Shown piece by piece: positions 10,790-61,939 of a DNA stretch of 64,000 nt. A model generated the notes under the pieces. It searched no databases, was not told the origin of the DNA, and worked only from the letters and a program-made list of their open reading frames with translations. Source of the DNA: Squalus acanthias (taxonomy: Eukaryota); the NCBI GenBank assembly GCA_030390025.1, contig CM059430.1:73532001-73596000 (forward strand), given 5' to 3'. How positions within the stretch are numbered: the stretch's first letter is position 1; each line of letters opens with the position of its first letter. The position numbers and the translations under genes are program-made.

Positions 10790-10827
10790 CGATCACAGGG
10801 CTGCAGCTGCTGGAGATTCCGAATGAT
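10790..10827 (-). pseudogene. Candidate 38-nt cytoplasmic exon, copy A
   Basis: Acceptor ttgttccttaatAG, donor CG|GTAATT; reads IIRNLQQLQPCD in phase 0-2; conserved with 61166-61203. Confidence 0.4.
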
Positions 10828-10969
10828 CTATTAAGGAACAACAAATTAATTTGGCCCCAACAAAAAGGTCATGGCACTTGAGTCCCCTCAGACGCTGCAA
10901 TATGTGAGCGTTCTTCAGCGCGAGTTATATTGAAAACCTGAGGACATGGCGTGAAGGGCTAGAACCACT

Positions 10970-11905
10970 GCTTTTCTTGATGTATATTAATGACTTGGAC
11001 GTGCTTCTACAGGGCACAATTTCAAAATTTACAGATCACACAAAATTTGGAAGTATGGGGAAAAGTCAGGAGGAGAGTGATAGACATCTGGAAGACATAG
11101 ACAGGTTGGTGTAATTTAATGCAGAAAAGAGTAAAATGATACATTTTGTTTGAAAGAATGAGGAGAGGACATATAAACTAAATGGTACAATCCTTAAGGG
11201 GGTGCACGAACAGAGAGACAAGTGGATATGTATGCACAAATCGTTGAAGGTGGCAGGGCAGGTTGAGAAAGCAGTTAAAACGCTTCTGGAACCTGGGCTT
11301 CATAAATAGACGTATAGAGTACAAAAGTGTGGAAATTATGATGGAACTGTATGAAACACTGGTTCAGCCCCAACTGGAGTACTGTGTCCAATACTGGGCA
11401 CTACCCTTTAGGAATGATGTGAAGGCCTTAGTCAGGGTGCAGAAAAATATTCCGAGAATGATTCCAGGAATAATGGAATTCAGTTATGTTGATACTCTGG
11501 AGAAGCTAGGGTTGTTCTCCTTGGAGCAGAGAAGATTGAGAGGAGATTTGATAGAAGTGTTCAAAATCATGAGGGGCCTGGACAGAGTAAATGGAGGGAA
11601 AATACTCCCATTGGCAGAAGGATCGAGAACCAGGGGATACAGATTGAAGGTGATTAGCAAAAGAATCAAATGCGATGAAAGAAAAAACTTTTTATCACGG
11701 CCACCCGGTAAGATCGGGAATGCAGTAACTGAAAGTTAGGTAGATGCAGATTCAATCACGGTTTCCAAAAGGGATTTTGATAAATATCTGAAGGAATGAA
11801 ATTTGCAGGGTTACGGGGAAAGGGCGGGGGTGTGAGACTAGCTGCAGTACTCTTGCAGAGAGCCCGCACTTGCTCGACTGGCCGAATTCTATGATTAAAT
11901 GATTC
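10970..11905 (+). mobile_element. CR1 3' fragment specific to copy A
   Basis: ORF with LYETLVQPQLEYCVQYW...LGLFSLEQRRLRGDLIEVFKI; ends attctatgattaaatgattcta; empty site near 61338. Confidence 0.9.
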
Positions 11906-12444
11906 TAAGCAGCCGTTTACTCAATTTCTCAAATGTTTGGGCAAAAGGAAGCAGAATCGAGCAGAAATGCTCTCCCTGAGTAGATGTCAGTCTGTAATTG
12001 ATCGTTGTCCGAATTTTATGGGCGATTAGTAATTAGGAGGAGAAATTCCAATGAGTTCTCCGGACACTCCACGTAAAAATTGCAGCACCACAAGGTAAAT
12101 AGCACAAACAGCAATTTTGAGCCAGTTATGCCCTTTCTCTGTTTGTGGTTCGAGATTTTCGTTGAAGTTAGGGCGAGGGACTGGCACGATTCCCATGACA
12201 TTTCATAGCCCATCTCTCCAAGGTAAGTTACAGTAATGTATTGCGCTGATTCTATTACCTTCTCCAGAACCAGATGAGCCGGCTGCATAAATTGTCTGAT
12301 TTACAGATGAATCGGCAACTTTTCATAAATCTCATCGAATTTGTTTATCTTCACCGGTACATTGTTTTCTTCTCTTTATAGTTAATTTAACATTTTGCAG
12401 ACGCAACAAATTATGAATACACTAGAGAAAATTCGAATACTTAC

Positions 12445-12558
12445 TTCTAAATCTATGCAATTTAAAGAGTTTCACTATAGTGACCACCAACAGCAGAATT
12501 AACAGTCCAAGACCGAGCCGGAGAAACATGAACAAGAGTGGGAAGCCACGATCGATGT
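12445..12558 (-). CDS. Transmembrane exon of copy A (open, 114 nt, phase 1-1)
   Basis: Acceptor tattttgcAG, donor A|GTAAGT. Reads DIDRGFPLLFMFLRLGLGLLILLLVVTIVKLFKLHRFR: hydrophobic helix with one internal Arg followed by a basic stop-transfer segment. Confidence 0.85.
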
Positions 12559-13707
12559 CTGCAAAATACACAGAACTTTCATTAAAATCTAACCGATCAG
12601 TAGCAGGGGTTGCATTAATGATACAAGACTGGGATAATGAAAACTCACACTCGGAGTTCAAAGAGAGTGTAAGGATCCGATCGGAAAAAAAATCTATCAA
12701 ACCCGACGTGGTTGTCCTTGGTTCACGCCATTGCTTTTGCAGGGGGACAGTGAAACCCCCACAGAAATGGGAAAATGTCAAAATTGTGCCAGGCTGCGAA
12801 TGATCTTTCCCTTCAACTTCGGCGGGAGTTCGGCAGCATCCAAAGAGAATCTAGTTTAAATAGCCATGTTTAGTTCTCTACATTGTTTCTCTGATGTTTC
12901 GCTGTCTCACGTCCTACCTGCTGACACTAATCAGTGGAGCCCAATGCAAATGCAGGTCCATGGTCTGCCGATAACCTGTGTCTGTTGTCGTTGTATTAAC
13001 GTTACTCTCGCTCTTTATTTTCTTCTACTTCTGTGCCCTTCTATATCCCCTTTTGTTGTCTGTCCTGGAGATATTTTTGCTCTCACTCGGCCCTCTTCTG
13101 CATCCTTCTCTACATATATGCTCTATCAGTTGCTGTCGAATGTGATGGGTGACAGTGTATGTTGTGAAAAACATATATTAACCAGTGGATGAAGGATGCA
13201 CTTTGGATGACTTTACAGGGACACTCTGGCCCTCACGGGTTCCTTTCGCAACCTAACCCCAAATATTCATCCGCGCACATTTCAGTACTCTAACTTCTAC
13301 AATGTTTTAATTTTTCAACTACCACCTTTCCTTCTTATCACTCCTCACTCAGATCGACAATGCCCTACCTCTTCCTTATTGAAATATCCAGTCAGGCCCT
13401 AAGTAAACATGACCACTTGCTCCTCTGTCAGTTCCCTGACATATAACCCTACATCCTTTCCAGCTGTTCTGCACTCTAATTCAATCCTCCAGACTCTGCG
13501 CTGAGCGCACTGAGGCACCTTTACACTTTGCCGGTTTCCTTTCGACTACTGTGGTCTTCCTTTCCTATTCTTTCTTTCGAAGATGCTATGTTTGGTTTGA
13601 AAAGTTAAATTACTTTTGAAATAAATTAAGTCGGGAAGTGAGATGTTAAAAAATGACTTCTTCTCTCCCTATCTATGTCTCTGACACTAATTTTGACTTT
13701 CATCACT

Positions 13708-15551: not shown

Positions 15552-16054
15552 AATAATAGAATAATGTGGGCGCATGGTTGTCCCTTTCTTCTGCTTTAAC
15601 TTATGCGGACGATCCCGCAAACATCTGAGAAATGCTCGAAACCGCCGCAGACATTGTAACCTGACTTTCGCGCGGGAGTGCAGGTCTTCGCTCAGAGACT
15701 CGTAGAATATCCGTGTAGTTTCTGGAGCAGAAATTCACATTTTGGTGCATTTTCCTTATGTGCTCATTCTTTCATGGGGACGCGACGATTTAAACGCGCC
15801 TGTGCTATGGAATGGGAGAATAAAACAGCTGTTCTACTTCTAATAACTGGACAACTCTCCGTGCTATAAACTGCAGAGTGCGGTTCATCTTTTCCGTGTG
15901 TGGAAATGTCTCCCGAAACCCTTTAAGCTCGCACATGATGAATAAATACTCACAAAGCACAAACTGGGGCTGGCCGTCCATGTTGACGGATGTCAGCAGA
16001 GTCAAAACTTTCAGCAAAGACCGAGGAAAACGGAAAAACAACCATTCTAATTAC

Positions 16055-16361
16055 CTGAAATGTGCATAAGATGATGAACATTGGCTACAGTCTTGAGAGA
16101 GATGTGTGATACCTGACAAGTATAATTAGTTCCGCTCTGCAAAGGAGCTGTTTCATTGAGACTACTGGAAACTTCAAACATTTGCGCTGGATTCCGTTTT
16201 TTGATTTGTTCCGTGCCCGTCAGGATTTCCGATGCATTTTTATACCAACTGATGTTCAGCTTTTCCGCGAAAAACGAAGCCGTTTTAAACACAAGCGACA
16301 AAAAAAGACGATGACTCATTTCTAAACACGATAGTAGAAATCCGCAACGGCGTCGAAGCAA
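16055..16361 (-). pseudogene. Ig C1-set domain exon (disabled)
   Basis: Acceptor tttttcaacAG, donor CAG|GTAATT, phase 1-1. Reads (V)ASTPLRISTIVFRNESSS-[+1 T in T7 run near 16300]-LSLVFKTASFFAEKLNISWYKN...FEVSSSL...NYTCQVSHISL. Carries the C1 signature YxCxVxH; B-strand Cys position is Phe (TTT); five N-glycosylation sequons. Confidence 0.9.
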
Positions 16362-16514
16362 CTGTTGAAAAAATAGAAATCAATTGTTATTTAAACTTAA
16401 TGGGGTTGAAATTGGTCTTGAACTGTAGCGTAAAACTGTCGATAACATATCAATGGAAAGTAATTTCTGACGGGGGTGGGGGCAGGGGGATCGGATTGTT
16501 ACTTCACTGTAATT

Positions 16515-17460
16515 ACACTAGGGATGGCCGACTTCAGTTTTGTAGGGAAACTAGAGAAACTGGGATTCTTCTCCTTCGAGCAGAGAATATTAAGGGAAGG
16601 TTTAATAAAGGCGTTCAAAATTATGAAGGGTTCTGATAAAGTAAATAATGCGAAGCTGTATTTGCAGACTGGTCGGTAACCAGAAGACACAGATTTAAGG
16701 TAATTGGCAAAAGAACCAGAGGTGAGATCAGGAGGTTATTTTTAAGCAGCGTGATATTATGAACTGGAATTATTATGAAAGGAAATATGCCGCTTTATGT
16801 TGATTTCTAGAAGATTGTCATACGGAGCTTCAATTTCCGCTGAGTGTTTCTGATCTCCCATCATAATCTCGGATGAAAATCTCCTGCCCGAGAACACCTT
16901 AGAAAATCTAGAGCACTTGAGTTGGGATTCTGTTGGTTCTATCCATTTTATTCCATTTGATGGTGGATTTTTCAAATGTTTTTTTTTCTCTTTTAAATGC
17001 AAGTATGTAAATTCTCTCACCACTTTATCTGGCGATGCATTCCATAGACTAAACAGCTTCTGTATAAAAATACATCCCAATCTCGTCCGTCGGTTTTTTG
17101 GTGGTGATCTTAAATTTATTACCTCTGGATATCAACTTACTAAGCAGTGTAACTTGCATTTTCTTACTTACTTTGTCAGAACTCTTCTTCATTTAAAACA
17201 CCTGAAAAAGATCTTGTGTTAACTTTCACTGATCTGGGGAAAAGGGCCTAATTTCTATAGCCTCTTCTTATTACCTTACCCTCTCATCCCTTATACCAAT
17301 TTAGTGCTGTTTAACCCTCGCAATGACCTTGACATCCTCCCCAATGTAATGCCCCCAAACTTGTACACAGTTGACTAACTGGAGTTTATACATGCGATTT
17401 TTGTCGGATTCAGTAATATAAAAGCATTTGGTCTCAATTCTTCTGTATAAAGAAGCCTAG
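16515..17460. mobile_element. Short CR1 3' fragments (plus about 16515-16780, minus about 16960-17460)
   Basis: LEKLGFFSFEQRILREGLIKAFKIMKG and its reverse-complement equivalent. Confidence 0.6.
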
Positions 17461-18629
17461 GATCCTGAAATACTGCATGAGTTCGACTAGTTTCGTGCCT
17501 CTTCTCCAGCTGGACATGGGAAGTGAAACTTTGCAAAGGGTGAGCTTCTGTCATTTAGACCTTTCTCCAGAGGCTGAGCCGGTGCTCCTGCCGGCGTTAC
17601 TGTGGGGGAAATGGTAAATCTCCGCGATAGCTGGGGCCTACGATTTGACGTTTTTACAGCTTTGCTTATTCCTCTTGGCATATTATCAAACTTTGTATCG
17701 GAACTTTGAAATGGATCTGCTGTTCAATTTGCTTTTTATTTGTTTTTAATTCATTCGAGGGATGTGATCGTTTTGGCACATCCGGCATTTATTGTTCATC
17801 CTTAGTTAACTGAAAAAATTGAGAGTGAGCGATTCGATACTACTGAAAGGCTTTCGATCCGCTTCAGAGGGCGATTGAGATTGAATCACATTGGTAAGGG
17901 TATAGATTCACATTTAAGCAAGATCTGGCAAGGAGTCAAGTTTTCTCCCCTAACGGATATCAGTGAAGGATTAGGATTTGGCGGCAATCCACTTCCACCA
18001 GCATTTATTTCCATATGTTTCTACTAAATTCAAATTTTGAAACTGTCAAGGTGGAATTTGAGTCATTCCCTGGATTACTAGTCCAGGGTCTGGATTGCTA
18101 GACCAGTAAAATAACTGCCAACCCACTGTATCTAATGCTTTTAATCTCATTCTTCCAACCCACAAAATAAACATATATCGGCACAGTATATTTTATTTGA
18201 CTGTTTCTAATCAATCTTCTTACCTATCGATATACTCATTAAGTTATATACAGTCTTCTTGATAGTGAACCACATCTCCCGATTCTAACGGTTCTATCAA
18301 TTTTCAAAGCGTGGCCGTGCAAATGGTGTTCTCCCAATTTACACCTGGATACTTAAATTATTATTGTCTGGGCCCGGTAATTGCGCTGGCCTGCCGCAGT
18401 GTCTGACTTCAAAGAAAAGGAAACCCCAATGGGCAATGAATTGGCGGCAAAACCGCCACCGCACTTGGTGGTCTTGGGCGCGAGCGAAAAATGTTGTTTG
18501 TTAGTCGCCAGATTTGCCATTTAATTGAAGTCAATGGAAAAGTAAATGGAGCGAAGTAAATAAACATTAGCGAAGCATTGTCATGAGCTTCGAGCTGCCG
18601 CCAAGATCACATTCACAGTTATTTTAAAT

Positions 18630-19950: not shown

Positions 19951-20511
19951 GATGTTGTTACGGTAATGAATGGTTAAACAAATATTGAGAAGGAACTAGC
20001 ATTGAATGATTAAAATTGCTTTACTGATGTTACCTTTCTACCTTTCAGTGAATTGTTTTTAGTGAGTTTTTTATCATTGTGGGATCTCTCCGATTTGGCA
20101 TGTTTGGTTACGGGCACTCATTGACAGCGTGTCATGCGTTGTATGTGATCCGCAATTATCTTTAGTGGAGTGGGCGGGGGTTCTCCGTCATCCGTTTTAA
20201 ACAGCGCAGTTTGGGCCACGGTATACCCGAGAATAAAAGAACGCGTTACGTGCATCAGTTTGAGAAATCTCGTGTAATTGATTTCCTCACGTTTTTCTAT
20301 TTCAGAAGTCGGGTTCTGGAATTATTGTAATTAGATTGCACTGTAACAGGAAGCAGGGAAAATATTCATTTGATTTCCTACGACGAAACTGGAGAACTTT
20401 TCAATCTGTGACATGTGATTATAATTCTGAGTGCAGCAGCAGTTTCAGGGCGGTGTGATTTAAATCTATCCAGAATGTAACTGCGCATATATATACCGGT
20501 ACTTGAGTTTA

Positions 20512-20802
20512 NNNNNNNNNNNNNNNNNNNNNNNNNNNNNNNNNNNNNNNNNNNNNNNNNNNNNNNNNNNNNNNNNNNNNNNNNNNNNNNNNNNNNNNNN
20601 NNNNNNNNNNNNNNNNNNNNNNNNNNNNNNNNNNNNNNNNNNNNNNNNNNNNNNNNNNNNNNNNNNNNNNNNNNNNNNNNNNNNNNNNNNNNNNNNNNNN
20701 NNNNNNNNNNNNNNNNNNNNNNNNNNNNNNNNNNNNNNNNNNNNNNNNNNNNNNNNNNNNNNNNNNNNNNNNNNNNNNNNNNNNNNNNNNNNNNNNNNNN
20801 NN
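20512..20802. other. Assembly gap (291 N) in the V-C1 intron
   Basis: Run of N. Confidence 1.
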
Positions 20803-20868
20803 TGCATTTACCTATCATTATTTCTGAGTAGATAAACGACATCTAGATTTGTATGACACGCCACTTAC

Positions 20869-21115
20869 CATATACTACTAGTTATATGCCGCATCCGTCA
20901 ACAAACCCGAGTCTCCTACAATTAAATCTGCAGCGATAGACGCCAGAGTCATTGGCACTCACATTCTGAAGATGCAGAAAAAATATTCCATTCTGTAAAA
21001 TATGCAATTCGATGCGATTGTCGGAGGTTATTGCTACAATTGAAGTGGAACCTTCCTTCCTCCAATAAACATTTATATTCTCGTTCGGTTCGCTGTTCCA
21101 CTCCAGCAACTCTCA
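20869..21115 (-). pseudogene. Ig V-set domain exon with germline-joined J-like G strand (disabled)
   Basis: C-strand NINVYWRKEG, E-strand IFFLHLQNV, F-strand DSGVYRC, G-strand DGCGI*LVVY (GxGxxLxV with TAA), donor G|GTAAGT in phase 1. A-strand-like RVAGVEQR is in another frame. The exon is only 247 nt and lacks the B-strand Cys, implying a frameshifting internal deletion. 5' boundary uncertain. Confidence 0.85.
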
Positions 21116-21222
21116 CTCGGAAATTTACAAAGCACAGATTTGTTCAACGCACAGATAAAAATAAAATTGCTTTAAAATCGGCGTATATTAGTGATTTAAA
21201 TATCCTAAGAGCATCAACTCAC

Positions 21223-21277
21223 AGCTCTATAGCTCCTCTTGTTAAAAATAGATAAATATAAAAGGATATCCCCGAAT
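21223..21277 (-). pseudogene. Decayed leader (signal peptide) exon of copy A
   Basis: 55 nt reading I(ATT)RGYPFIFIYF*QEEL*S plus 1 nt, ending at donor T|GTGAGT in phase 1. A 107-nt intron separates it from the V exon, typical of Ig leader-V spacing. No ATG, two stops. Confidence 0.55.
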
Positions 21278-21409
21278 GTAAGGTCGGAAAGCGACTTCCA
21301 ACAGGCAGCTGTGAACTGCCAGCGGAAGGTAAATATGTTGTAATGGAACAAGATACGGAAATACTGTGCAAGGGAAATGTTTTGAGGAAGCTTGTAAAGG
21401 CAAAATGCC

Positions 21410-23255: not shown

Positions 23256-23261
23256 AATAAC

Positions 23262-50220: not shown

Positions 50221-51138
50221 CATGCTTTTATTCGGACGTTTAAAAATTGTTACAGACAGCAAAACATAAGTTGGGGCCCTCACATGGGCTAAGGTTAAAC
50301 CTGAAATAAATATGGACAAGAGTTTAAAAATGTATGTATTGCTAAATATTTAAAACATTATATTTGTTATTATAACGGGGAAATTTGTCACTCCAATAAA
50401 ATTAAGATTAGTTTTTCAGGATCTTAATATTTGTTGACGTATCAATACACTGTAAAACCCCAGTTGCAACTAATGCATCCAGACCTAATTTTCAGTGGGG
50501 TACTTAACAGTGATATTAAAGTGGTGAAAGCGCAAGTTTTCGTCAGTTTCACTGATATCACTGATTAAATTGATTGGCGGCTATAGCGGTATAGCGCAGC
50601 CAGTGTCGGAGCAGTGAATGACTGACCGCAATGTCAGGATTTCCGTTTAGATGCGCAGTCAGTTTCAAAAAGACAATAACAGCGAACACTGTTAGTTCCG
50701 CGTTACTACCCAACGCAAAACCCGGCCCTATGTTAAATGGCGATTTCCAAAACCTTCATGAAATGGAAATGTATGAGAACAAGTCTGCATAATGCAGTTA
50801 TAATTTTGGATTGGTGTTCCGGTAGAGACCACTGAAACAACCGGGGTAACTACAAACTTAACCCAGCTGTACAGGATGCGACTCTGCTAATTAATTAACT
50901 GCAGATGGAGTGCACAATTCAATCACGTGTACCGATCAGCTTTCGAATCGAATGGAAAACACTTTTGCTTCATCAAAGACTTTAAATTTAATTATTGTTT
51001 TATTGAAGCAATTCAATAACAAGACATAGAAGAATACTTTTCAAACAGCTGCAGAACGGTTTAGGCAAGGCTCAATAACAAGGAAAAAGATTTTCAAATT
51101 ACTCAAGTAAAATATTTAACATAATAAACTTTTTTAAC

Positions 51139-51144
51139 TTTATT
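51139..51144 (-). promoter_or_regulatory. Candidate polyadenylation signal AATAAA for copy B
   Basis: tttatt on the plus strand about 260 nt past the stop codon, in AT-rich unique sequence; a second candidate lies near 50999. Confidence 0.3.
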
Positions 51145-51403
51145 CCGGAAATTTTTTCATGAATCAAAGTATAACGTTTGGCAATATTTCAGAAAGGAGC
51201 TGGAGAAATTTTGAATGACTCGCTTCGTTCCAGTGTCCACAGCAGATTAGCGGAGATATTGTATCAACGGGAACAGATAGAGTGGCGCCTGACAACTATC
51301 TTCTACACCGATTATCACTTTTTTCTGAACCACTGGTACAGGAAATGTAAAAAAAGAGTTCTCTCTTTCCCTCGACTGACGCTCTCGATGATCAGCGACT
51401 TGC

Positions 51404-51595
51404 TCAGCGGAAGATTATATTTTCACATTTATTTGTAACATGACTGTTGGTTCCGACCACCCTTTTCTGTTTTTTGAACTGAACCTGCTCGTACACTATG
51501 GGCTCCTCTTGCCGTTTCGGTTTGGTATATGTCTTCTGACCGACGAAATCCAGCGCACAGTAAGTCAGCCTTTCTTCAGCTACCATTTGCGGAAC
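51404..51595 (-). CDS. Terminal cytoplasmic exon of copy B with two ITIMs (LTYCAL, IVYEQV)
   Basis: ctactacAG acceptor, phase 0, open to TGA: VPQMVAEERLTYCALDFVGQKTYTKPKRQEEPIVYEQVQFKKQKRVVGTNSHVTNKCENIIFR*. Both motifs match (I/V/L/S)xYxx(L/V). Confidence 0.85.
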   Translation of the reverse strand, partial: VPQMVAEERLTYCALDFVGQKTYTKPKRQEEPIVYEQVQFKKQKRVVGTNSHVTNKCENIIFR

Positions 51596-52006
51596 CTGTA
51601 GTAGTGTTCAGAAATAGCGTTAACATTCTGTCTTCAAAAGCCTGCGGATTGCTACCTCAATCAAACTGGGATATTACTGCATAGGATGAGGCAACTGCGA
51701 CCTGCGAGAACCGACCACAACTTCTCTCACCATCCTGAAGCTGCTCATGCATACACTGCTGCACCTCAAACCTGAGCCACGTTACCACATTCACCTGAAC
51801 ATACATGCCGATATATGTTATATATAGACGATTATGATAGTGAAATAACAACATAAACTTCAGCCACAAAAGATTCGTGTAAGTATGAAACACTTTCCAG
51901 CAGCAGAAGTATCGCTAAACAGATTTAAGGTAATTGGCAAAAGAGCCAGAGGTAAGGTGAGGACATTTTTTTTAACACAGTAAGTTATTATGACCTGGAA
52001 TTCATT

Positions 52007-52734
52007 GGCCCATATTTTCTGATCGCAGGTCTCCCGCGGGCGGAGGCCTGCGATCTGGAAAAATCTGAGCCCTTACCTGAGGCCTCCCGGGACGCGCACA
52101 GTTCCGATGCTGGGCCTCAACAAACGCCAAGTGCGCAGGGCCACGTATCCCAGAGGCGCATGCAGTTCGCAGCATCCCTGGGATCACGTGGGCCATGGGG
52201 AACCAATCACAGAAAGGAATCTCCCTTCATACATTTGATAGGAAGACCTGTCAAATATATGAATGGAGATCAATTAAAAAACATAGTAAAACTTGAAATA
52301 CATTTTTAGAAAAATCACATTTTTTAAATGACTTGAAATGACAATAAATTAAGTTTTATAAATAAAGTATTTTACGGGGCTAAAAATAAGCTTACCTTTT
52401 TTAAAAAGTATTTTTAAATGATAGATCAGTGTAAAAAATATTTTAAAAACTTTTATCTACTCTTATCCTGGTAAAAGCAAGCCTTACACCTGCTTTTACC
52501 AGGCGTAAACATTGTAAGGGTTTTCTGCGGGCGGAGGGTCTGCAAAAAGCTGAACTACCCACCCGCAGAAGCCCTTCTCCTTGGCAGGCGGAGGGTCTGT
52601 CAAGAGGATTCTTGACAGAGCGGAAATACCGGTTTTCAGCGTATGCGTTGTGCATGCCTGAAACCGGCATTTCCTTTGTCCTACGGGTGGGTGCACAGCG
52701 GGTAGCCACACATACTGCTCGGAATATCCGGCCC
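52007..52734. mobile_element. MITE family 2, copy nested in a CR1 3' fragment
   Basis: Ends ggcccatattttc / gaatatccggccc; splits the CR1 3' sequence at 51920-52935. Confidence 0.75.
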
Positions 52735-53364
52735 TTTATCTGAAGCAGTGGTGGAAGCAGAATGAATCGTACATTTCAAAAGGAAATTAACTATGCGCTT
52801 GAAAAGTAAAATACTATCAGGGTTGTGGAGAAAGAGAAAGGGAGTTTGAATAATTTAAAAGCTTTCCAAAGAGATGGCACAGGTACGATGGATCGAGTGG
52901 CCCACTTCTGTGTTGAAAGGTTCTATCATTCTATGATAAGCCTGTTAACAAGGAGAACATGCAGCGTCTAACATAAGTGTATTGCTCGATTGCAATACCA
53001 GTGTGAGACACCAAATAAGGTTAAGGGGATATTTAATCGCGGCTTTCAAGATCATAAAGGATTGTGTTAAAGTAAATAAGGAGATTTTCTTTCCACTGAG
53101 AGAATAATTGGTAACAGGAGGACACAGATATAAATTAATTCTCAAAAGAGCCATAGTTGAAATGATTAAAAAAACTTTTATGCAGCAAGTTATTATGATC
53201 TGGAATGCACTGCCTGAAAGAGTAGTGGGAAGAGATTCAATAGTAACTTTAAAAACGAATTTTAGTAAATACTTACTTTGGGAATATTTCAGGACTATGG
53301 GGAAACAGCAGAGTGAGACCAGTTACATCGCTCTTTCAAAGAGCCGACCAGGTAGGATGGACAA

Positions 53365-56300
53365 AATAAGAACATAGGAAATAGGAGCAGGAGTAGGCCA
53401 TTCGGCCCCTCGAGCATCCTCCGCCATTCAATAAGATCATGGCTGATCTGATCTTGGCCTCAACTGTAATTTCCTGCCTGCTCCCATAACCCTTTACTCC
53501 CCCGTTTTTCAAAAATCTGTCTATCTCCGTCTTGAATATATTCAAAGACTCAGCCTCCACAGCTTTCTGGGGTAGAGAATTCCAAAGATTCACGACCCTC
53601 TGAGAGTAGACATTCCTCTTCATCTCCGTTTTAAATGGGCTAACCTTTTTCTGAAACTATGCCCCCTCTTTCTAGAATCCTCCACGAGGGGAAACTTTCT
53701 CACAGCATGTAACCTGCCAAGCCCCCTCAGAATCTTATATGTTTCAATAAGATGATCTCATACATCTTAATTCGAATGAGTATAGGCCCAACCTGCTCAA
53801 CCTTTTCTCATACGACAACCCCATCAACTCAGGAATCGACCAAGTGAACCTTCTCTGAACTGTTTCCAATGCAAGTATATCCTTCCTTAAATAAGGAGAC
53901 CAAAACTGTATGTAGTACTCCAGGTGTGGTCTCACCAACGCCTTGTACAATTGTAGCAAGACTGTCCTACTTTTATACTCCATCGGCCTTGCAATAAAGG
54001 CCAACATTCCAATTGCCTTCCCAATTATTTGCTGTACCGGCATGCTAACTTTTTGTTTTTCATGTACGAGGACACCCAGATCCCTCTGTACCGCAGCATT
54101 CTGTAGTCTCTCACCGTTAAAATAATATTTTGATTTTTATTCTTCCTACCAAAGTGGATAACCTCACCTTTTCCCACATTACACTCCATCTGCCAGATTT
54201 TTGCCCACTCACTTAACCTATCTATATCCCTTTGCAGACTCTTTGTGTCCTCCTCACAACTTGCTTTCCCACCTATCTTTGAATAATCAGCAAAATTGGC
54301 AACAGTACGCTCGGTCCATTCATCCATGTCATTAATATAGATTGTAAATAATTAAGACACCAGCACTGATCCCTAGTTAAAGTTTGCCGACCTGAAAATG
54401 ACCCATTTATCCCGACACTCTGCTTTCTGTTAGTTGGCCATTGATCTATCCATTTTAATATATTACCCTCATTACCGTGAGCCCTTATCTTGTGCAGTAA
54501 CCTTTTGTGTGACACCTTATCGAATGCCTTCTGGAAATCGAAATAAACTGCATCTACTGGTTCCCCTTTATCCCCCACGGCTGGTTACATCCTCAACGAA
54601 CTCTAGTAGGTTTGGCAAAAAAGATTTTCATTTCATAAAACCATTTGACTCTGCTTGATTGTATTATGATTTTCTAAATGTACTGCTACTACTTCCATAA
54701 TAATGGATTCCAGCATTTTCCCAAAGACAGATGTTAGGCTTACTGTCCTATAGTTTGCTGTGTTCTGTCTCCCTCATTTCTTGAATAGAGGCGTTACAGT
54801 TGCGGTTTTTCAATCCGTTGGGACCTTTCCAGAATCCAGGGAATTTTGGTAGATTACAGCCGATGCATCCACTATCTCTGCAGCCACTTTGTTTAAGACC
54901 CTTGGATGCAGGCCTTCTGGTCCAGGGGTCTTGTCAGACTTTAGTCCGATTAGTTTGACTCGTACTTTTTCACTAGTGTTAGTGATTGTTTTAAGTTCCT
55001 CCTTCCCTTTTGCCCCTTGATTATCTACTATTATTGGGATGCTTTTAATGTCTTATACGGTGAAGAAAGATACAAAATATTTGTTCAATGTCTCTGCCAT
55101 TTCCCTGTTTTCATTATTAATTCCCCAGTCTCATGCTCTAAGGGACCAACGTTTACTTTAGCTACTCTCTTACATTTATATACATGCAGAAGCTCTAACT
55201 GTCTATTTTTTATTATTCTTGCCAGTTTACTCTCATAATCTATCTTCCTCATCTTTATTTCTTTTTAGTCATCCTTCGCTGGTTTCTAAAAATTTCCCAA
55301 TCCTCTGGCTTACCACTAATTTTTGCAACATTGTATGCCTTTTCTTTTAATTTGATACCATTCTTAACTTCCTTGGTTAGCCACGGCTGGTTCTTCCTTC
55401 TCGTAGAGTCTTTCCTTCTCACTGGAATATACCTTTGCTGAGAGTTATGAAATATGCCCTCAAATGTCTGCCACTGCTTATCTACTGTCTTACACTTTAA
55501 CATATTTCCCAGTCCTTTTTATCCAACCCTGTCTTCATACCTTTATTAATTGCCTTTATTTAAGTTTAAGACACTATTATTAGAGCCATGTTTCTCACCC
55601 TCAAACTGAATGGGAAATTCTATCATGCTATGATAACTCTTACCTAGAGGACCCTTTACTATGTGATCATTAATTAATCCTGCCTCATTACACATTCGCA
55701 GATCTAAAATAACCTGCTACCTGATTGTTTCCCGTCCACAACGTATTGTTCTAAGAAACCATCCTGAATACAGTCTATGAACTCGTACTCAATTGTACAT
55801 TTGCCAATTTGATAGTCTAAATGCAGAATAAAATCGCACATGATTATTACAGTACCTTTCTTACAAGTCCCCATTATTTCTTGATTTATACTCTGCCCTA
55901 TTGTGTAACTACTGTTTGGGGGCCTATAGAGTACTCCCACCAGTGGCTTCTTTCCCTTACTATTTCTTATTTCCACCCAAACAGATTCTCTATCTTGATC
56001 TTCCGAACCAATATAATTACTCACTACTGTACTGATGTCATCTTTTATTAACAGAGCCACCCCACTTCCTTTTCCTTGCTGCCTATTCTTCCGAAATGTT
56101 AAATACCGCTGAATATTCAGTTCCCAGCTTTGGTCTCCTTGCAAACACGTTTCTGTAATGGCTTTCAGATCATACCCATTTATATATATTTGTGCCGTCA
56201 ATTCATCTATTTTCTTACGAATGCTGCGTGCATTCAGATAAACAACCTTTAATGTTTTAAGATTATCCCCCTACTCTTAACAAATTTGCCAGTGCCGTCT

Positions 56301-56465
56301 TATTATTGTACTTTCTGTCCATTCCTGTCAGACTCTGGTTATCATTACCCCCATTCACTATCCTGCATTATTGTCTTGTCTTTCTCTTTAACTTTCGCAA
56401 TTCCCCCACCTGAATCCTACCCCTACTATTTAATTTAAAGCCCTGTCTACAGCCCTAGTTATTCG
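53365..56465 (-). mobile_element. CR1 LINE ORF2 in the intron between the two ITIM exons
   Basis: Endonuclease at 55704-56201, RT fragments, 3' end aagaacataggaa; an adjacent plus-strand 3' scrap at about 53010-53365. Confidence 0.9.
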
Positions 56466-57951
56466 ACGATTGGTCTCCTTCTGTTCTGTTAGTTTAAATG
56501 ATTCTATGTAATAATGTGATAAGTCTGTTAAAGACCACATGATGATTCTAACTGAAGTATATGTCGCGTATGCCATACCAGTGTGCAATAGCGGAGCTTG
56601 TCAGCTGTGGAATTGTTTATACATTTGGATTGATTTAATTCATTGCGCCTAGCGATTGCTTTATGAACAATATCCGGGTTACCGGCAGGGAAGATATATC
56701 ATTTAGCTCAAAATTGCGATCAAGCTGTGCTTCACACGGAGAGCTGGGAGTGTGAAAATATCAGACTTTTTCTCTCATTGGTGCCGAAGTCAACTTTCTC
56801 AAATCGGCATTAATAAGGCAATAATAGCCTCAAAATGGGGTTGGTAGTCTGACAGCCCTTATAAACAGAGTGGCTGGACAGAGCTTCTGTCTACTCAGGT
56901 GCTAGGTCCTTTTAAGATGCAAATCGTAGTCCTATAACGTACCCTTATTGTAATTTTAGGACCTAACAGTGTGGAACTTGTGCCCTGCACTCGCCAAACA
57001 CTTTTACTGGCTAAACTGCAAACGTTTCTCCAAAAAGGCCGGTAATTCTCCTGGGTCTATAAAAAGAATCTATGCCGCTGCTCCTCAAGCTTTCCGACTT
57101 CAGAATCGCAACCTCCACTCCTGGAATTACATTACTGCGCTGGGTATTTTCCGCCTACTCCTCTGATAATACACCATCCTGAATCCAGTCTAAATGCATC
57201 GAAATGTCCCTCTAGGGCGAGCAACGCGCCGCTTCTATTAAAATGAAGCGAAAGCATCAAAATGGCTCGGGGTTTAGTCCTGCCAGATTGCGCCGTCCGC
57301 TGACACAAAGGTTAAACTTTACCCCAAAGAGTGCACACACGAATATGCAGTAAATTGGTGTTGGATACAGTTGGAGAAGGCAATGTGTAATTTTTGTCTA
57401 AGTGCACGCCTGTCAGTTCAGTGTTTAAGACTCGCAAAATTATGTTAAACACACATCGGGACAAACGTAATTTAGTATTTTATCTTAACCATAGGTAAAA
57501 TGTAAATCTCACTGTGAATATACTATCCTATTCCCTTCATTATTTTACAAAAATAAAACCGGTTGGCGGTTTCCAATTGGCTTAATCTCCCTAATTGCTG
57601 ATCAGTCCATATTTTGGCATATGAGAGAGATGGTGTTTGGACACACGAACGATAACAGAATCGATGGGGGTGAACGTTGTAAAACTGTTGAAGTGTTACG
57701 ATGATATTGCGTTGTGGTGCAAGACGAATTTCAAGCTATAATTCTAAATCAACGGGGAGTAAATTGGTCTGGGGTGTACTCTTACTGTACAAGAATAGCA
57801 AGCTGTTACAACTAAGACAATCATTATTTACGTTGCAGATTGGGCGGCTACAAGCAATGTACGAAAAAAAAATACTTCAAACACACATTGGTTTACAAAT
57901 ATATGAAATTGTGTTACATATATATGGTATATATGCATGAAATAGTGTTAC

Positions 57952-58086
57952 CTTTAGATATGGAATTATCAATACCTCCGCGTGCTCTTCGTTCGTTTTC
58001 ATCTGCTTGGGGTTTGAACGCTTCTTCGGGTCAGTAAACTTCACAGTTCCATAGGTGAGTTGTTCATCTGTGACGCCTTCCTGAAC
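57952..58086 (-). CDS. Cytoplasmic exon 1 of copy B with ITIM LTYGTV
   Basis: gttgcAG acceptor, AAG|GTAACA donor, 135 nt, phase 0-0, open: VQEGVTDEQLTYGTVKFTDPKKRSNPKQMKTNEEHAEVLIIPYLK. Confidence 0.75.
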
Positions 58087-58171
58087 CTGCAACTCTACTT
58101 GCACAATGTTCATTATATTAAAGGACAGATTGAGATCGGTTGTAGAATTTAAATTGAATCGTGATTCTTAC

Positions 58172-58184
58172 CGGGGTTCCATTT
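58172..58184 (-). CDS. Candidate 13-nt micro-exon (phase 2-0, xNGTP)
   Basis: gaattttAG|AAATGGAACCCCG|GTAAGA, 85 nt upstream of the first ITIM exon; phase links the 38-nt exon to it. Confidence 0.4.
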
Positions 58185-58864
58185 CTAAAATTCAATAGTG
58201 TTTTATTTAATTGCTGTTCATAAATCGTGTTTATATACATTTGTACTTTGATACCCTCACATCGATGTAAGTTACACTTATTCTCAATGTAGAAATGCTG
58301 ATGACCCCCAACTAGAATGTTATATTTGTATTGGTAGCATAATGTAATTCAAAAATGCACATCTCTCTGTAGTGCCCGTATGTCTTTGACTATTCATTAA
58401 AAGGTCACGTTAACTCGCTCCCTGTTAGGTGCATTATTCGTCTAATTATGGAACAAACAGAAAAAGTTTTATTCTTTTGGACTGCTGCATGTAGATTATT
58501 TTCTCTGTCGCGAATTTCATTTTCAACAGTATAAGAGGAGGATTATACATCCGCACATGAAAACCCTCATCGGCCTGCCTGATTCTGTAACCTTCTCCAA
58601 CGTTGCAGCCTCTGAGTACTCTGTCTTTCTCCAACTATGACTTATTTTGCATCCCGTATTCATTAACCACATGGCTGACATCTGTGCCTTTAGCCCAATA
58701 ACCCGTAGCTCTGGAATTCAGTCATTCATCAATCGGCTTCTGCACCACCCTTTGCTCCTTTAAAACTATCCTTGAACCCGTCTCTTTGATCAAGGTTTTG
58801 GGAAGCTCTCTCATTATCTCCAACTTTTGCACCATGTCAATTCTTGACAGGCTAAGCTACTTTG

Positions 58865-60700
58865 AATCATAGAAACAAAGATTCATGCAGCACAGGATGA
58901 GGCCAGTTTGTCCATCGTGCCGGCTCTTTGGTAGAGCTATTTATTTAGTTCTACTCCCATCCTCTTTCCCATTACCCCTGTTATATTTTCCCTTTTATTG
59001 TTTGTCCAATTCCCTTTTGAAAGTTTCTGTTGAATTGGATTCCACCACCCTTTCAGTCAGTAGATTCCAGATCACAACAACTCGCTTGTTTCCTCATGGC
59101 GCCTCTGTTTCATTTGCTTATCACCATAAATCTATGCACTCTGATTACCGACCCTTCTGCCACTGGAATAGTTTCTGCTTATTTAGGGCATCAAAACCAT
59201 TCCTGACATTGAGCAGCTCTATCTTAATCTTCTCTGCTTCAAGGAGAACAACCACGCTTGTGCAGCCTCTCTAAGGCCTTGATATCCTTGCTAAAGTGTG
59301 CTGCCCAGAATTGAAAACATTACTCAGGCTGAGGCCTAACCAGTGTTTCATATAGGTTTAGCCCAACTTCCTTGCTTTTGTACTCTATGTCTTCTCAAAT
59401 TATGTTGGCACCTTCAACTATTTATCTTCAAGCACGCTAGGTCTCCACGCTCCTGTAACCATTTAAAATATATGATTTATTGTACACTACCTCTCCGCAT
59501 TCTTTGTACCAAAATATATCACTTCACACTTCTCTGCATGACATTTCATCTGCCATGTGTCTGCCCATTTCACTAGTCTGCTTATCTCCTCACGAATTCG
59601 GTTGCTATTATCGTCTTTGTTTGTTGCATTTCGGAGCTTCCTCTCATCTGCAGACTTTGAAATTATGCTCTGTTTTCGATTTCCAGGTCATTAATTTATA
59701 TCAAAAAAAGCAGTTGTCCTAATACCGACCCCTGGGGAACACCATTTTATTCTTCCCTCTGCAACTCTACCCTCTGCATTATGTCCCTTGGCCAGTTTCG
59801 TATCCACATTGCCATTGTCCCTTAAATTACATGGGCGTTAAATTTTTTAACAAGTCTAGTATGTGTTACTTTGTCAAATGCCTTTTGAAAATTCATATAC
59901 ACAACATCAACCACACAACACTCATCAATGCGTTCTATCACTTCATCAAAGAAGTCTATATATATCATCAGAAACGGTTTCCCTTTAACAAATCCGTGAT
60001 GATTTTTATTAGTCAATACATTTTTCAATGCCAATTCAGTTCGTCCGGGATTACAGTCTCTAAAAGTTTCCCCACCATAGATGTTAGGCTAACTGGCCTG
60101 TAATAACAGGGTTTATACCTCCCCCCTTTTTTAGACAGCGGTGTAACGTTTGCAATCCTCCTGTACTCTGGCACCACCCCACCTCTAAGGAGAATTTGGA
60201 GATTGTGGCCAAAGCCTTGACAATTTCCACCCTGACTAGACTGTCTCCCATCCGGACCCCGTGAATTTTCACCTGTGAGGACTGGCCACTTTTTAAGTAT
60301 CTTCTGTTTATGTATTTTAATCCTCCCCAATATCTCTGCTACATTCTCCGTTCGTGCTACATTGCAGCCTTCTCTTCTCCAGTGAAGAAACGTTAAATTT
60401 CGAATTTTATACCTCAGTCATGCCCTCTGATGGCACAGCAATTTTTCCTTTTTGGCCCCTCATCGGTCTCACCCTTCTGCTGACTTACCTATTACTACTG
60501 ATATATTTATAAACTGCATTTGTGTTCACTTTTAATTTAGCCGCTAATCTATTCACATAGTCTGTTTTTTAGTTCTCCTCTACCCTCATCAACCCTTTCC
60601 GTTTCTTCAACAAAGAACTCAGTCAAGTTAATTGGATACGATTTGCCTCTAAGAAATCAGTGCTGACTTTAATTTATTAGCCCACACTTTTCAAAAAGCT
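58865..60700 (-). mobile_element. Old CR1 RT/3' fragment (paralogue of 8040-10330)
   Basis: HGFVKGK..., VVYMNFQKAFDKV, YRPVSLTS. Confidence 0.8.
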
Positions 60701-61165
60701 AATGAAGCTTCTTGATATTTATTTTCTTCATCAAATTAATTACATTAATTCAAATTGTTGCTGCACGCGTGGGCTGCATCTTGAAATGATTCAGAGGAAA
60801 ATGTTGGCTTTGTGAAGCCAAACGATGGAGGAATGATTTAACATGAAGCCAGCACATAGATTACCTAGAGACACAGTGGAGGCCATAATTGTCAGCAATT
60901 CCGAATAGAAGTCGTATATTTTGCCTAGTAAGTTGTCTTGACGCATTACCCTGATTTCTGCCATTGTTCTACTGATTTCTAGCGTCAATTTTGGAAGGAA
61001 TCTGCTGGTATCCCACAGAAATAGACTAGTTAGTTAAAACCCCCCATTAACGCGTTTTTCTGGGCAATTTGCCAATCTTGCACTGAACGTACAGGGCATG
61101 GGTAATATATCGAAGTATTTCAGGGTCTACAGGGACATGGTCAACCGAGGAACAACAAGAACTGC

Positions 61166-61203
61166 TGACCACAGTGCTGCAGCTGCTCGAGATTCCTAAA
61201 GAC
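61166..61203 (-). pseudogene. Candidate 38-nt cytoplasmic exon, copy B
   Basis: Same acceptor as copy A; reads VFRNLEQLQHCG; the donor position reads GC rather than GT. Confidence 0.35.
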
Positions 61204-61887
61204 CTATTAAGGAACAAGAATATTCTTTTGCCCCACAACAAGGTCAGGGCACTTGAGTTAGCTCAGGTGCTGAAATATGCCAGACTCCTTCGGTGCGAGA
61301 TCTATTGAACATCTAAGGAAATGGCGTAAAGTGCGAGAAGCAGCTGTTAACTCAGATTCTCAAGGTTTTGGGCAAAAGGAAGCTGAATCAAGCAGAAATT
61401 CTCCCCCCAAGTAGCTGTCAGTTTGTAATCGAGAGTTGTCCGTCTTTTAAGGGCGATTAGTAAATTGGGAGGATAAATTCGTTTGAGTTCGCATGAGTTC
61501 TCCCGACCCTCCATATAATAATTGCAGCACCTCCCAAGGAAAATGGCATAAACAGCAATTTTGAACCAGTTCTCTGTTTGTTGATTCAGATGTCCCCTGA
61601 AGTTAAGTCGAGGGACTGGCATGATTTCCATGCAATTTCATAGCCCATCTGTCCAAAGTGAGATCCAGTTACAGTGAAACATTCCGCTGAATTTATCTCC
61701 TTCTCCAAAAGCCACATTAGCCGAATGCATAAATTGTCTAATTTACAGAAGAATCAGGAACTTTTCTTTAACCTGAACGAATCTGTTTATCTTCACAGGT
61801 GCAATTTTTTTCTTCTTTTTATTGTTGATTTAATATTTTGCAGATGCAAAGACTCATGATTACATTAAAGAAGATTTGAATTCTTAC

Positions 61888-61939
61888 CTCTAAATCTATG
61901 CAATTTAAATGTACAAGAGTGGAAAGCCACTGTCGATAT
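61888..61939 (-). pseudogene. TM exon remnant of copy B (62-nt internal deletion)
   Basis: Splice sites retained (tattttgcAG, AG|GTAAGA); 52 nt versus 114 nt in copy A; reads DIDSGFPLLYI* with the hydrophobic helix absent. Confidence 0.85.

What the first reader, a model, noticed from the sequence alone, without database searches (positions are those of the whole stretch)
10790..61939. Tandem cluster of non-rearranging V(J)-C1-TM-ITIM immune receptors hidden among LINEs
Seen: splice-compatible exons for leader, V, C1 and TM in copy A, and homologous TM plus ITIM exons in copy B. Together they reconstruct an ancestral V-C1-TM-multi-ITIM receptor. Known: C1-set domains are largely confined to Ig, TCR, MHC, beta2m, tapasin and SIRP; germline-joined VJ-C1 genes (PRARP and VJC1 types) are discussed as relics of the antigen-receptor precursor. 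Inference: this is part of a larger, likely poorly described multigene family of antigen-receptor-like inhibitory receptors.
Basis: partly seen in the sequence, partly recalled or inferred. Interest (0 to 1): 0.85.

Follow-up and report, generated by a model that had tools for sequence, protein, structure and literature searches.

The report
Two decayed shark SIRP-like receptor genes
The window holds two old, broken tandem copies of a V-C1-transmembrane-ITIM immune receptor gene from a large cartilaginous-fish family that public annotations already predict under inconsistent names and that looks like a relative of the SIRP receptors.

Summary
The exons exist, on the minus strand, far beyond chance. 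Copy A has a V(J-like) exon remnant (20869-21150), a C1 exon (16055-16361) and a TM exon (12445-12558). Copy B has a TM remnant (61888-61939) and two ITIM exons (57976-58097, 51404-51595).

Both copies are broken. A's V has lost its 5' part, changes frame and carries an in-frame stop. A's C1 has a frameshift and Phe in place of the canonical Cys. A lacks the 8.66 kb that holds both ITIM exons in B. B's TM exon is 52 nt instead of 114 and runs into a stop. No leader exon was found.

The N gap lies in the V-C1 intron, 66 nt from the V exon. No contig bridged it, so the V-C1 linkage rests on scaffolding only.

The inferred family is real. A 77-aa C1 piece found 125 relatives. RefSeq predicts many intact V-C1-TM-ITIM models in sharks, rays and chimaera, named SIRP-alpha-like, Ig-lambda-like, NCR3LG1-like or tapasin-related-like. 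In a C1 tree the family is sister to the first C1 domain of coelacanth and lungfish SIRPs (96/85).

Verdict: decayed members of a SIRP-related paired-receptor family. Other readers of this scan noted similar genes elsewhere in this genome.

The parts
20869..21150 (-). Copy A V(J-like) exon remnant. Canonical Cys codon at 21127-21129. The frame changes between about 21127 and 21075. In-frame TAA at 20882-20884 inside the J-like G-x-G-x-x-L-V-V motif. Donor GT at 20867-20868, phase 1. The first strands of the domain are missing and stops lie just upstream.
   Evidence: sequence and frames; Pfam V-set 9.6e-6; tblastn: 54 HSPs from 105 family proteins; at most 33% identity to any family V, long branch.
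20512..20802 (.). Assembly gap inside the V-C1 intron of copy A, 66 nt downstream of the V exon. Continuity was not shown.
   Evidence: the only N run; no X1 or X2 contig lies on both sides; one X2 contig ends at 20511 with unplaced letters, which were not read or used.
16055..16361 (-). Copy A C1-set exon (acceptor AG 16362-16363, donor GT 16053-16054, phase 1 at both ends). A 1-nt frameshift lies in the T-run 16300-16306. TTT (Phe) at 16287-16289 replaces the canonical Cys. The Y-x-C-x-V-x-H motif is kept.
   Evidence: (107 HSPs); the X1 contig is identical. The X2 contig has one T fewer and TGT, so it is in frame with Cys.
12445..12558 (-). Copy A TM exon, 114 nt, intact, with AG acceptor and GTAAGT donor. 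One Arg sits in the hydrophobic helix.
   Evidence: (48% identity to the TM region of P0002).
8038..8054 (.). Junction in copy A where the 8.66 kb of copy B (50733-59392) that carries both ITIM exons has no counterpart.
   Evidence: A 7511-8038 matches B 50223-50732, and A 8054-8650 matches B 59393-59991.
61888..61939 (-). Copy B TM exon remnant, 52 nt against 114 in A. The helix is deleted and the phase-1 reading runs into TAA at 61905-61907.
57976..58097 (-). Copy B cytoplasmic exon 1 with the ITIM L-T-Y-G-T-V. Open, with AG acceptor and GT donor, entered in phase 1 and ending in phase 0.
   Evidence: (P0002, 49% identity, E 2e-6).
51404..51595 (-). Copy B last coding exon with the ITIM L-T-Y-C-A-L and a second motif I-V-Y-E-Q-V. 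Stop TGA at 51404-51406.
   Evidence: (P0002, 65% identity over 54 aa, E 5e-18).
7511..13236 (-). Copy A arm of the segmental duplication (the 3' half of the gene), interrupted by a repeat at 9431-10194.
50223..64000 (-). Copy B arm of the duplication. It runs off the window end, with a LINE insert at 62156-63591 and LINE material inside 53355-56249.

Best explanation
The window holds two head-to-tail copies, about 51 kb apart on the minus strand, of a germline-joined V(J-like)-C1-TM-ITIM receptor gene. Both have decayed among LINE insertions.

They belong to a large family found throughout cartilaginous fishes. Intact members have one V domain ending in a J-like strand, one C1 domain and one TM helix. 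The tail is either long with one to four ITIM-like tyrosines, or short with an Arg in the helix.

By analogy with SIRP-alpha and SIRP-beta (inferred, not shown), the ITIM forms would recruit SHP-type phosphatases after tyrosine phosphorylation. The Arg-TM forms would pair with an ITAM adaptor. That would make it a paired inhibitory and activating receptor family with an unknown ligand.

The copies here do not work:
- Copy A has a broken V, a broken C1 in the reference haplotype, and no ITIM exons.
- Copy B has lost its TM helix and terminates before its still-open ITIM exons.

The family's C1 domain is the sister of the first C1 domain of lobe-finned-fish SIRPs, so the family is best read as SIRP-related.
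For: Exons and lesions come directly from the sequence.

Domain identity: Pfam V-set and C1-set.

Family size: 125 hits at E<=1e-3 and 28 at E<=1e-10 for a 77-aa C1 piece.

Intact relatives and their names, from Heterodontus, Heptranchias, Callorhinchus, Chiloscyllium, Mobula, Leucoraja, Carcharodon, Scyliorhinus and others: 15 hits; 37 hits, of which the 35 strong ones are all chondrichthyan.

Architecture: of 50 representatives with V+C1+TM, 49 have one C1, 26 have ITIM-like motifs and 24 have none. By my reading of that output, at least 7 of the 24 have an Arg in the helix.

tblastn of 105 family proteins hits only these four exons. The other 13 single HSPs (12 from P0055, 1 from P0082) fall on LINE fragments.

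Careful C1 tree: family clade 100/97; window C1 with P0002 100/97; family plus fish SIRP d2 96/85. Coelacanth P0100 is a true SIRP: PDB SIRP-alpha 1e-52 and SIRP-gamma 3.8e-49, next hit 1.3e-35.

Duplication: 79.9% identity, K2P 0.234.

The C1 frameshift is not an assembly slip. An independent short contig of run X1 is identical over 16051-16460.
Against: - Run X2 carries the same species label but differs by about 3% throughout. It has a version of the copy A C1 exon that is in frame and has the Cys. The C1 lesions are therefore not fixed, or X2 shows a near paralogue.
- Whether the V stop and frame change are fully covered in X1 and X2 is not certain. No indel was listed there, but 26 substitution rows were not shown.
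- The V exon is joined to the rest only across an unbridged gap. It is far more diverged (at most 33-37% identity) than the C1 (61%), so it might belong to another gene.
- The SIRP link rests on one domain, on fish SIRPs only, and on comparators that were themselves hits of the query. No named IgL, TCR, MHC class II, beta-2-microglobulin or PRARP sequences were in the tree.
- The family profile against PDB ranks Ig chains and UrIg2 above SIRP-alpha.
- Fold searches did not discriminate.
- Expression was not detected, but the two RNA-guess runs are small.
Confidence: 0.78

Rival explanations
1. One reading: the family is a separate, undescribed lineage of antigen-receptor-like VJ-C1 genes, a relic of the Ig/TCR precursor comparable to PRARP or UrIg, and not a SIRP relative.
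For: - V and the J-like motif are in one exon followed by a C1 exon.
- The V domain of P0004 hits Ig light-chain V-J regions and amphioxus IgVJ-C2 in PDB, and not SIRP among the best 60.
- The window C1 piece's best PDB hit is UrIg2, weakly at 1.2e-5.
- The family profile scores UrIg2 at 1.1e-35 against SIRP-alpha at 4.2e-29.
- Other first-reader notes place such genes inside IgL arrays (unchecked).
Against: - The C1 tree puts the family with fish SIRP d2 (96/85) and apart from IgNAR, IgH-like and UrIg2-like multi-C1 proteins.
- Coelacanth SIRP V domains fall inside the family's V clade.
- PDB whole-chain scores are inflated for chains with several C1 domains.
- Tails with paired tyrosine motifs and Arg-TM partners are the SIRP pattern (partly recalled).
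Confidence: 0.15
2. Copy A is a working or recently working activating-type member (Arg in the TM, no ITIM exons) in some haplotypes, and the reference merely carries a null allele.
For: - The TM exon is intact with consensus splice sites and an Arg in the helix, as in ITIM-less family members.
- X2 has an in-frame, Cys-bearing C1 exon.
Against: - The V remnant lacks its first strands, changes frame and has a stop. No indel or change at the stop was listed for X1 or X2.
- No leader was found.
- The TM exon ends in phase 1 at a donor with no downstream coding exon left.
- The exons have no RNA coverage in X7 and X8.
Confidence: 0.08
3. Copy B encodes a secreted V-C1 decoy, because the shortened TM exon stops translation before the membrane anchor.
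For: - The 52-nt exon keeps both splice sites and reads into a stop after 11 codons.
- A first-reader note reports leader, VJ and C1 exons just beyond the window end (unchecked).
Against: - The stop lies upstream of two further spliced exons, a layout that usually triggers nonsense-mediated decay (general knowledge).
- A 61-62-nt loss is a typical pseudogene lesion.
- The state of copy B's V and C1 could not be examined.
Confidence: 0.1
4. The exons are chance open frames or repeat-derived sequence.
For: ITIM-like hexamers are common by chance: dozens of matches in the six-frame scan. The region is full of LINEs.
Against: - phmmer E 2.6e-26 against 1.84 billion proteins.
- tblastn E 1e-31 (C1) and 5e-18 (last exon).
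- Splice sites and phases match the family.
- Read depth over the exons is single-copy.
Confidence: 0.01

Closest known systems
SIRP family (SIRP-alpha, -beta, -gamma; PTPNS1)
   Same: - V domain with a J-like last strand, followed by C1-set domain(s), one TM and a tail with several ITIM tyrosines.
- ITIM-less partners carry a basic residue in the TM.
- RefSeq calls many family members 'tyrosine-protein phosphatase non-receptor type substrate 1-like'.
- The family's C1 is sister to the first C1 of coelacanth and lungfish SIRPs (96/85).
   Different: - One C1 domain instead of two (49 of 50 representatives).
- Identity to fish SIRP C1 domains is low (23-25% for the lungfish models).
- Against PDB, SIRP-alpha is not the best match.
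- The ligand is unknown.
- The family is strongly expanded in cartilaginous fishes.
- Tetrapod SIRP sequences could not be brought into the tree.
UrIg / UrIg2 of elasmobranchs (PMC12227049: abstract and passages seen)
   Same: Non-rearranging VJ exon followed by C1-type domains in sharks. Weak best PDB hit of the window's C1 piece (9dmx, 1.2e-5).
   Different: - UrIg has three C domains and only a secreted form. Nurse-shark UrIg2 has nine C1-type domains plus a TM and cytoplasmic region. The words ITIM and inhibitory do not occur in that paper's main text.
- The multi-C1 shark proteins that I take to be UrIg2-like (P0005, P0017) fall on the other side of the C1 tree.
PRARP (non-rearranging VJ-C1 genes of chicken and other bony vertebrates; Fu et al. 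2019)
   Same: [quoted passage not shown] I saw only the citation and one sentence in PMC10751288; the details are recalled.
   Different: Could not be compared. The paper is not held and no PRARP sequence was available from any tool.
Immunoglobulin light chains
   Same: Two-domain V-C1 ectodomain. Foldseek's best matches to the AlphaFold model of P0004 are Fab light chains. RefSeq names some members 'immunoglobulin lambda-1 light chain-like'.
   Different: V and the J-like part are in one exon with no rearrangement signal. There is a TM and a signalling tail. The C1 does not group with the Ig-type C domains in the tree.
NITR of bony fishes (recalled)
   Same: Multigene families of V(J-like) receptors with ITIM or charged-TM variants.
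   Different: As I recall, NITRs have no C1-set domain. Not tested here.

Membership tests
Chondrichthyan V(J)-C1-TM-ITIM receptor family (RefSeq 'SIRP-alpha-like' and other names) | V-set domain whose J-like G-x-G-x-x-L-x-V strand is in the same exon | tested here: met
   The motif is present in copy A but interrupted by a stop.
Chondrichthyan V(J)-C1-TM-ITIM receptor family (RefSeq 'SIRP-alpha-like' and other names) | A single C1-set domain that falls inside the family clade | tested here: met
   (C1-set 1.3e-7); family clade 100/97, and the window C1 pairs with P0002 at 100/97.
Chondrichthyan V(J)-C1-TM-ITIM receptor family (RefSeq 'SIRP-alpha-like' and other names) | TM exon followed by cytoplasmic exons with ITIM-like tyrosines (or a short tail with Arg in the TM) | tested here: met
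   TM exon in A. Two ITIM exons in B. No single copy has both.
Chondrichthyan V(J)-C1-TM-ITIM receptor family (RefSeq 'SIRP-alpha-like' and other names) | Open reading frame through all exons (a working member) | tested here: not met
   A: V frame change and stop, C1 frameshift, ITIM exons absent. B: TM exon truncated with a stop.
SIRP family | Ectodomain of one V and two C1-set domains | tested here: not met
   49 of 50 family representatives have one C1. The single two-C1 model is an exact tandem repeat.
SIRP family | Domains group with SIRP domains in trees | tested here: inconclusive
   C1 is sister to fish SIRP d2 at 96/85, and V is in one clade with coelacanth SIRP V (91, quick tree). 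No tetrapod SIRP, IgL, TCR, MHC II or PRARP rows were in the trees.
SIRP family | Binding of CD47 and recruitment of SHP-1/SHP-2 | not testable with these tools
   Needs experiments.
UrIg / UrIg2 | VJ domain followed by three or more C1-type domains | tested here: not met
   One C1 exon lies between the V and TM exons.
Rearranging antigen receptors (Ig, TCR) | V exon split from J by recombination signals | tested here: not met
   The V frame runs straight from the Y-x-C motif through the J-like motif to the splice donor in one exon.
PRARP | Orthology to the chicken PRARP pair | not tested
   No PRARP sequence or paper was available.

The most novel reading that the evidence does not exclude
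The family as a whole, not these two dead copies, may be an undescribed lineage found throughout cartilaginous fishes. It would be the sister group of SIRPs and would keep the ancestral one-V, one-C1 layout from before the second SIRP C1 domain arose. On this reading it has expanded into paired ITIM and Arg-TM receptors, partly embedded in Ig light-chain arrays. That would give a living model of the VJ-C1 signalling receptor from which both SIRPs and antigen receptors are thought to descend.
Probability: 0.3. Interest if true: 0.6.

Novelty: new member of a known kind. Interest (0 to 1): 0.3.

Why it matters
For this window, little: it documents two pseudogenes and shows how LINE-rich immune clusters shed exons.

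For the family, more:
- A consistent name and a proper phylogeny are missing. RefSeq calls its members SIRP-alpha-like, Ig-lambda-like, NCR3LG1-like, tapasin-related-like, CD276 homolog or uncharacterized.
- A single-C1, J-bearing, ITIM or Arg-TM paired receptor family in the oldest jawed vertebrates bears on the origin of SIRPs and on the V-C1 core of antigen receptors.
- The apparent presence or absence of the C1 lesions between two samples suggests haplotypic gene-content variation, as in other paired-receptor clusters.

Tried and rejected
- **Leader exon.** Two scans of the minus strand upstream of the V remnant (21100-24000, then 21100-26000) looked for ATG plus a hydrophobic run plus GT. 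The first found nothing. The only good-looking candidate of the second (25512-25567) lies in the endonuclease part of a LINE, so I rejected it.
I saw nothing resembling a receptor exon in the six-frame translations around 10790, and no family protein hits there.
- **Third copy.** None in the window.
- **Structure.** The AlphaFold model of P0004 from alignment A1 has block-mean pLDDT of 83-96 over residues 21-220, apart from one block at 75. Foldseek against PDB gave only Fab light chains at the top. VIA-align wide gave ties at Z 13-16 among many two-domain IgSF proteins (Rst, B7-H6, Neph1, PD-L2, butyrophilin, UrIg2 14.3, SIRP-gamma 13.2). Neither discriminates.
- **ESM Atlas** with the V piece returned generic V-set clusters only.
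- **Fetching tetrapod SIRPs.** The search with coelacanth P0167 returned 4 coelacanth proteins only. The word-index searches never scored tetrapod SIRPs, so their absence means nothing.
- **Literature.** Seven completed full-text searches found no paper on this family. Two further attempts failed on term format. Fu 2019 and Flajnik 2023 are not held. Supplements are closed. The supplementary gene lists of PMC10751288 and PMC12227049 might name these genes, and I could not see them.
- **Gap.** No contig bridges it.
- **Expression.** X7 and X8 cover only the LINE parts.

Full report
**What the window is.** It is 64 kb, about 39-45% G+C, with a single N run at 20512-20802. It is crowded with LINE reverse-transcriptase and endonuclease open frames on both strands. 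Family relatives all come from cartilaginous fishes, so the source is a shark-like genome. The species label of the matching sequencing runs is coded.

**Observation, copy A (minus strand).**
- *C1 exon.* A six-frame scan found a C1-type Y-x-C-x-V-x-H frame at 16050-16379 and a V-type frame at 20885-21112. Pfam gives C1-set E 1.3e-7 (32.3 bits, cut-off 21) and V-set E 9.6e-6 (26.2 bits, cut-off 26). The C1 exon runs 16055-16361 between an AG acceptor and a GT donor, in phase 1 at both ends.
- *C1 lesions.* The exon's first 24 codons are in another frame from the rest. The shift lies in a run of seven T (16300-16306). The codon aligned with the family's canonical Cys is TTT (16287-16289).
- *V exon.* It ends ...G-x-G-x-(stop)-L-V-V-Y G|GTAAGT, with the donor at 20867-20868. 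TAA at 20882-20884 lies inside the J-like strand. The frame differs between the Cys codon (21127-21129) and the W-R-K...Y-R-C part. There is no recognisable first strand, only stops upstream.
- *No rearrangement.* V and the J-like part are one exon, so the gene type does not rearrange.
- *TM exon.* The TM exon is 12445-12558 (114 nt). It is intact with consensus splice sites and has an Arg in the helix.
- *Phases.* The phases of V, C1 and TM fit each other.
- *Search procedure.* I did not build or search a joined model. Each exon, and each piece of a broken exon, was searched separately.

**The gap.** The N run lies in the V-C1 intron, 66 nt from the V exon. The question of 'in frame' therefore does not arise, but linkage does. 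Logan contigs of two DNA runs and two RNA-guess runs were laid on 15900-21300. No listed contig lies on both sides. One X2 contig stops at 20511 with unplaced letters, which I did not read.
- The link between A's V exon and its C1 and TM exons therefore rests on scaffolding, exon order, orientation and matching phases only.
- The V piece reaches at most 33-37% identity to any family V and sits on a long unresolved branch.
- The C1 is 58-61% identical to its nearest relative.
- That contrast is what a decayed or fast-evolving V would give. It does nothing to confirm linkage.

**Copy B and the duplication.** Self-comparison shows A 7511-13236 and B 50223-64000 as co-linear, same-strand segments. 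They are 79.9% identical over 3614 aligned bases (K2P 0.234), so the duplication is old.
- B holds 8.66 kb (50733-59392) with no counterpart in A (junction 8038/8054).
- B has a LINE insert at 62156-63591.
- tblastn with family proteins places two cytoplasmic exons inside the B-only stretch. The first is 57976-58097 with L-T-Y-G-T-V. The second is 51404-51595 with L-T-Y-C-A-L and I-V-Y-E-Q-V, and it is 65% identical to the tail of P0002 (E 5e-18). Both are open, with good splice sites.
- B's TM exon is only 52 nt (61888-61939). The helix is gone and the reading stops at 61905-61907.
- B's V and C1 lie beyond the window, according to an unchecked first-reader note.
- tblastn with 105 family proteins gave 180 HSPs: 107 on the C1 exon, 54 on the V exon, 4 and 2 on the two tail exons. 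The other 13 were single HSPs on LINE fragments, from two models with what look like LINE-derived N-termini. There is no third copy.

**Are the lesions real?** A 410-nt contig of run X1 matches 16051-16460 without a difference, so the seven-T run is not an assembly slip. X1 may, however, be the assembled individual.
- Run X2 comes from another sample and study under the same species label. It differs by about 3% all along the stretch.
- Its 267-nt contig over 16088-16355 lacks one letter at 16300 and has changes at 16288, 16296 and 16298. On the minus strand these restore the frame and turn TTT into TGT (Cys).
- The C1 lesions are therefore haplotype-specific, or X2 shows a very close paralogue.
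- In the V exon only substitutions were listed (20918 in both runs; 21054, 21072 and 21141 in X2) and no indels. Twenty-six substitution rows were not shown, and exact coverage of the stop codon is not documented.
- The RNA-guess runs X7 and X8 covered only the high-copy LINE parts.

**The family.** phmmer of the 77-aa in-frame C1 piece against 1.84 billion representatives gave 125 proteins at E<=1e-3 and 28 at E<=1e-10.
- The best hits are 250-400-aa proteins with leader, V ending in G-T-G-[ST]-x-L-x-V, one C1, a TM and tails with repeated [LV]-x-Y-A-x-L and x-x-Y-A-x-[IVL] motifs.
- Their sources are RefSeq and UniProt predictions from Heterodontus francisci, Heptranchias perlo, Callorhinchus milii and Chiloscyllium punctatum. 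Further searches added Mobula, Hemitrygon, Leucoraja, Hypanus, Hemiscyllium, Stegostoma, Carcharodon, Scyliorhinus, Mustelus, Pristiophorus and Amblyraja.
- The names are inconsistent: SIRP-alpha-like, SIRP-beta-like, Ig lambda-1-like, NCR3LG1-like, tapasin-related-like, CD276 homolog, class II beta-like and uncharacterized.
- Of 105 family proteins in hand, 50 have V+C1+TM. Of these, 49 have one C1, 26 have at least one ITIM-like motif, and 24 have none. By my reading of that output, at least 7 of the 24 carry an Arg in the helix. This is the layout of paired inhibitory and activating receptors.
- The window's nearest relative, P0002 (XP_067905014), and the Arg-TM model P0055 (XP_067905015) have consecutive accessions on one Heterodontus chromosome.

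**Relation to known families.**
- *C1 piece against PDB.* The window's C1 piece hits UrIg2 weakly (1.2e-5), then MHC class II beta, IgNAR and IgM C domains.
- *Family profile against PDB.* It ranks an Ig chain (2.5e-38), UrIg2 (1.1e-35), further Ig chains, SIRP-alpha (4.2e-29) and SIRP-gamma (2.2e-25). Whole-chain scores favour chains with several C1 domains.
- *Hits outside cartilaginous fishes.* The better hits of the C1 piece are lungfish and coelacanth SIRP-like proteins. Coelacanth P0100 is a true SIRP by PDB comparison: SIRP-alpha 1e-52, SIRP-gamma 3.8e-49, next hit 1.3e-35.
- *C1 tree.* A careful IQ-TREE of 100 C1 domains was run (a quick tree of all 167 rows agrees). It used 40 family rows chosen to span the 108-row clade, the window piece, and all 59 non-family rows.
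  - The family is a clade at 100/97, and fish SIRP first-C1 domains are a clade at 99/95.
  - The two together form a clade at 96/85.
  - They exclude the second SIRP C1, Triakis IgNAR, tortoise IgH-like, multi-C1 shark proteins that I take to be UrIg2-like, and NCR3LG1-like domains.
  - Caveats: about 100 columns, comparators that were all hits of the query, and no named IgL, TCR, MHC II, beta-2-microglobulin, PRARP or tetrapod SIRP-alpha rows.
- *V tree.* In the V tree the coelacanth SIRP V domains sit inside the family's clade.
- *Fold searches.* They did not discriminate.

**Mechanism.**
- *Shown:* domain types, exon structure, motifs and lesions.
- *Inferred by analogy with SIRP-alpha and -beta and other ITIM receptors:* intact ITIM members inhibit through SHP-type phosphatases, Arg-TM members signal through an ITAM adaptor, and the V domain binds an unknown ligand.
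- The two copies here cannot do this. A has no usable V, no tail exons, and a broken C1 in the reference. B stops before the membrane anchor.

**Literature.**
- I saw the abstract, outline and passages of PMC12227049 (UrIg2; no occurrence of SIRP, PRARP, ITIM or inhibitory).
- I saw passages of PMC10751288, which cites PRARP, NKp30 and UrIg as non-rearranging VJ genes.
- Fu et al. 2019 and Flajnik et al. 2023 are not held. What I say of PRARP and NITR is recalled.
- Seven full-text searches found no paper on a chondrichthyan V-C1-TM-ITIM or SIRP-like family. Supplements were closed.

**Verdict.** The loci themselves are pseudogenes. The family is already in sequence databases and reads as SIRP-related. 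Interest is modest for the window and moderate for the family. Other first-stage readers of this scan noted similar genes elsewhere in this genome. I did not check those notes.

Noticed in passing
window 15900-21300: Run X2 (same species label, other sample and study) differs from the window by about 3% over unique sequence throughout. That is high for alleles, so it may be a diverged haplotype of an immune cluster, a close paralogue or a mislabelled relative.
   Followed up: partly
window 16443-16804 and 18615-19881: Very high-copy LINE parts (summed contig depth up to about 1.4 million). They are also present in the two RNA-guess runs, so the repeat family is probably transcribed or the runs contain DNA.
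   Followed up: no
window 21214-21568: CT-rich low-complexity tract giving long Leu/Ser/Pro frames just upstream of the V remnant, where a leader and promoter would be expected.
   Followed up: no
window 9431-10194; copies at 4287-5045 and 32050-32794: A roughly 760-nt repeat is inserted in copy A but not in copy B. One copy is 90% identical and one is 79% identical, both in opposite orientation.
   Followed up: no
protein P0055 (Heterodontus francisci XP_067905015), residues 1-190: The N-terminus of this RefSeq model matches LINE fragments all over the window (12 single tblastn HSPs). The model probably fuses repeat sequence to a V-C1-TM gene.
   Followed up: partly
proteins P0002 and P0055: Consecutive RefSeq accessions on one 99.65-Mb Heterodontus chromosome. 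One is an ITIM-type model without a V domain and the other is Arg-TM type. They may be a neighbouring inhibitory and activating pair orthologous to this locus.
   Followed up: no
protein P0066 (Amblyraja radiata), residues 112-312: This is the only family model with two C1 domains, and the two are near-identical tandem repeats. It is either a recent exon duplication or an assembly or model artefact.
   Followed up: no
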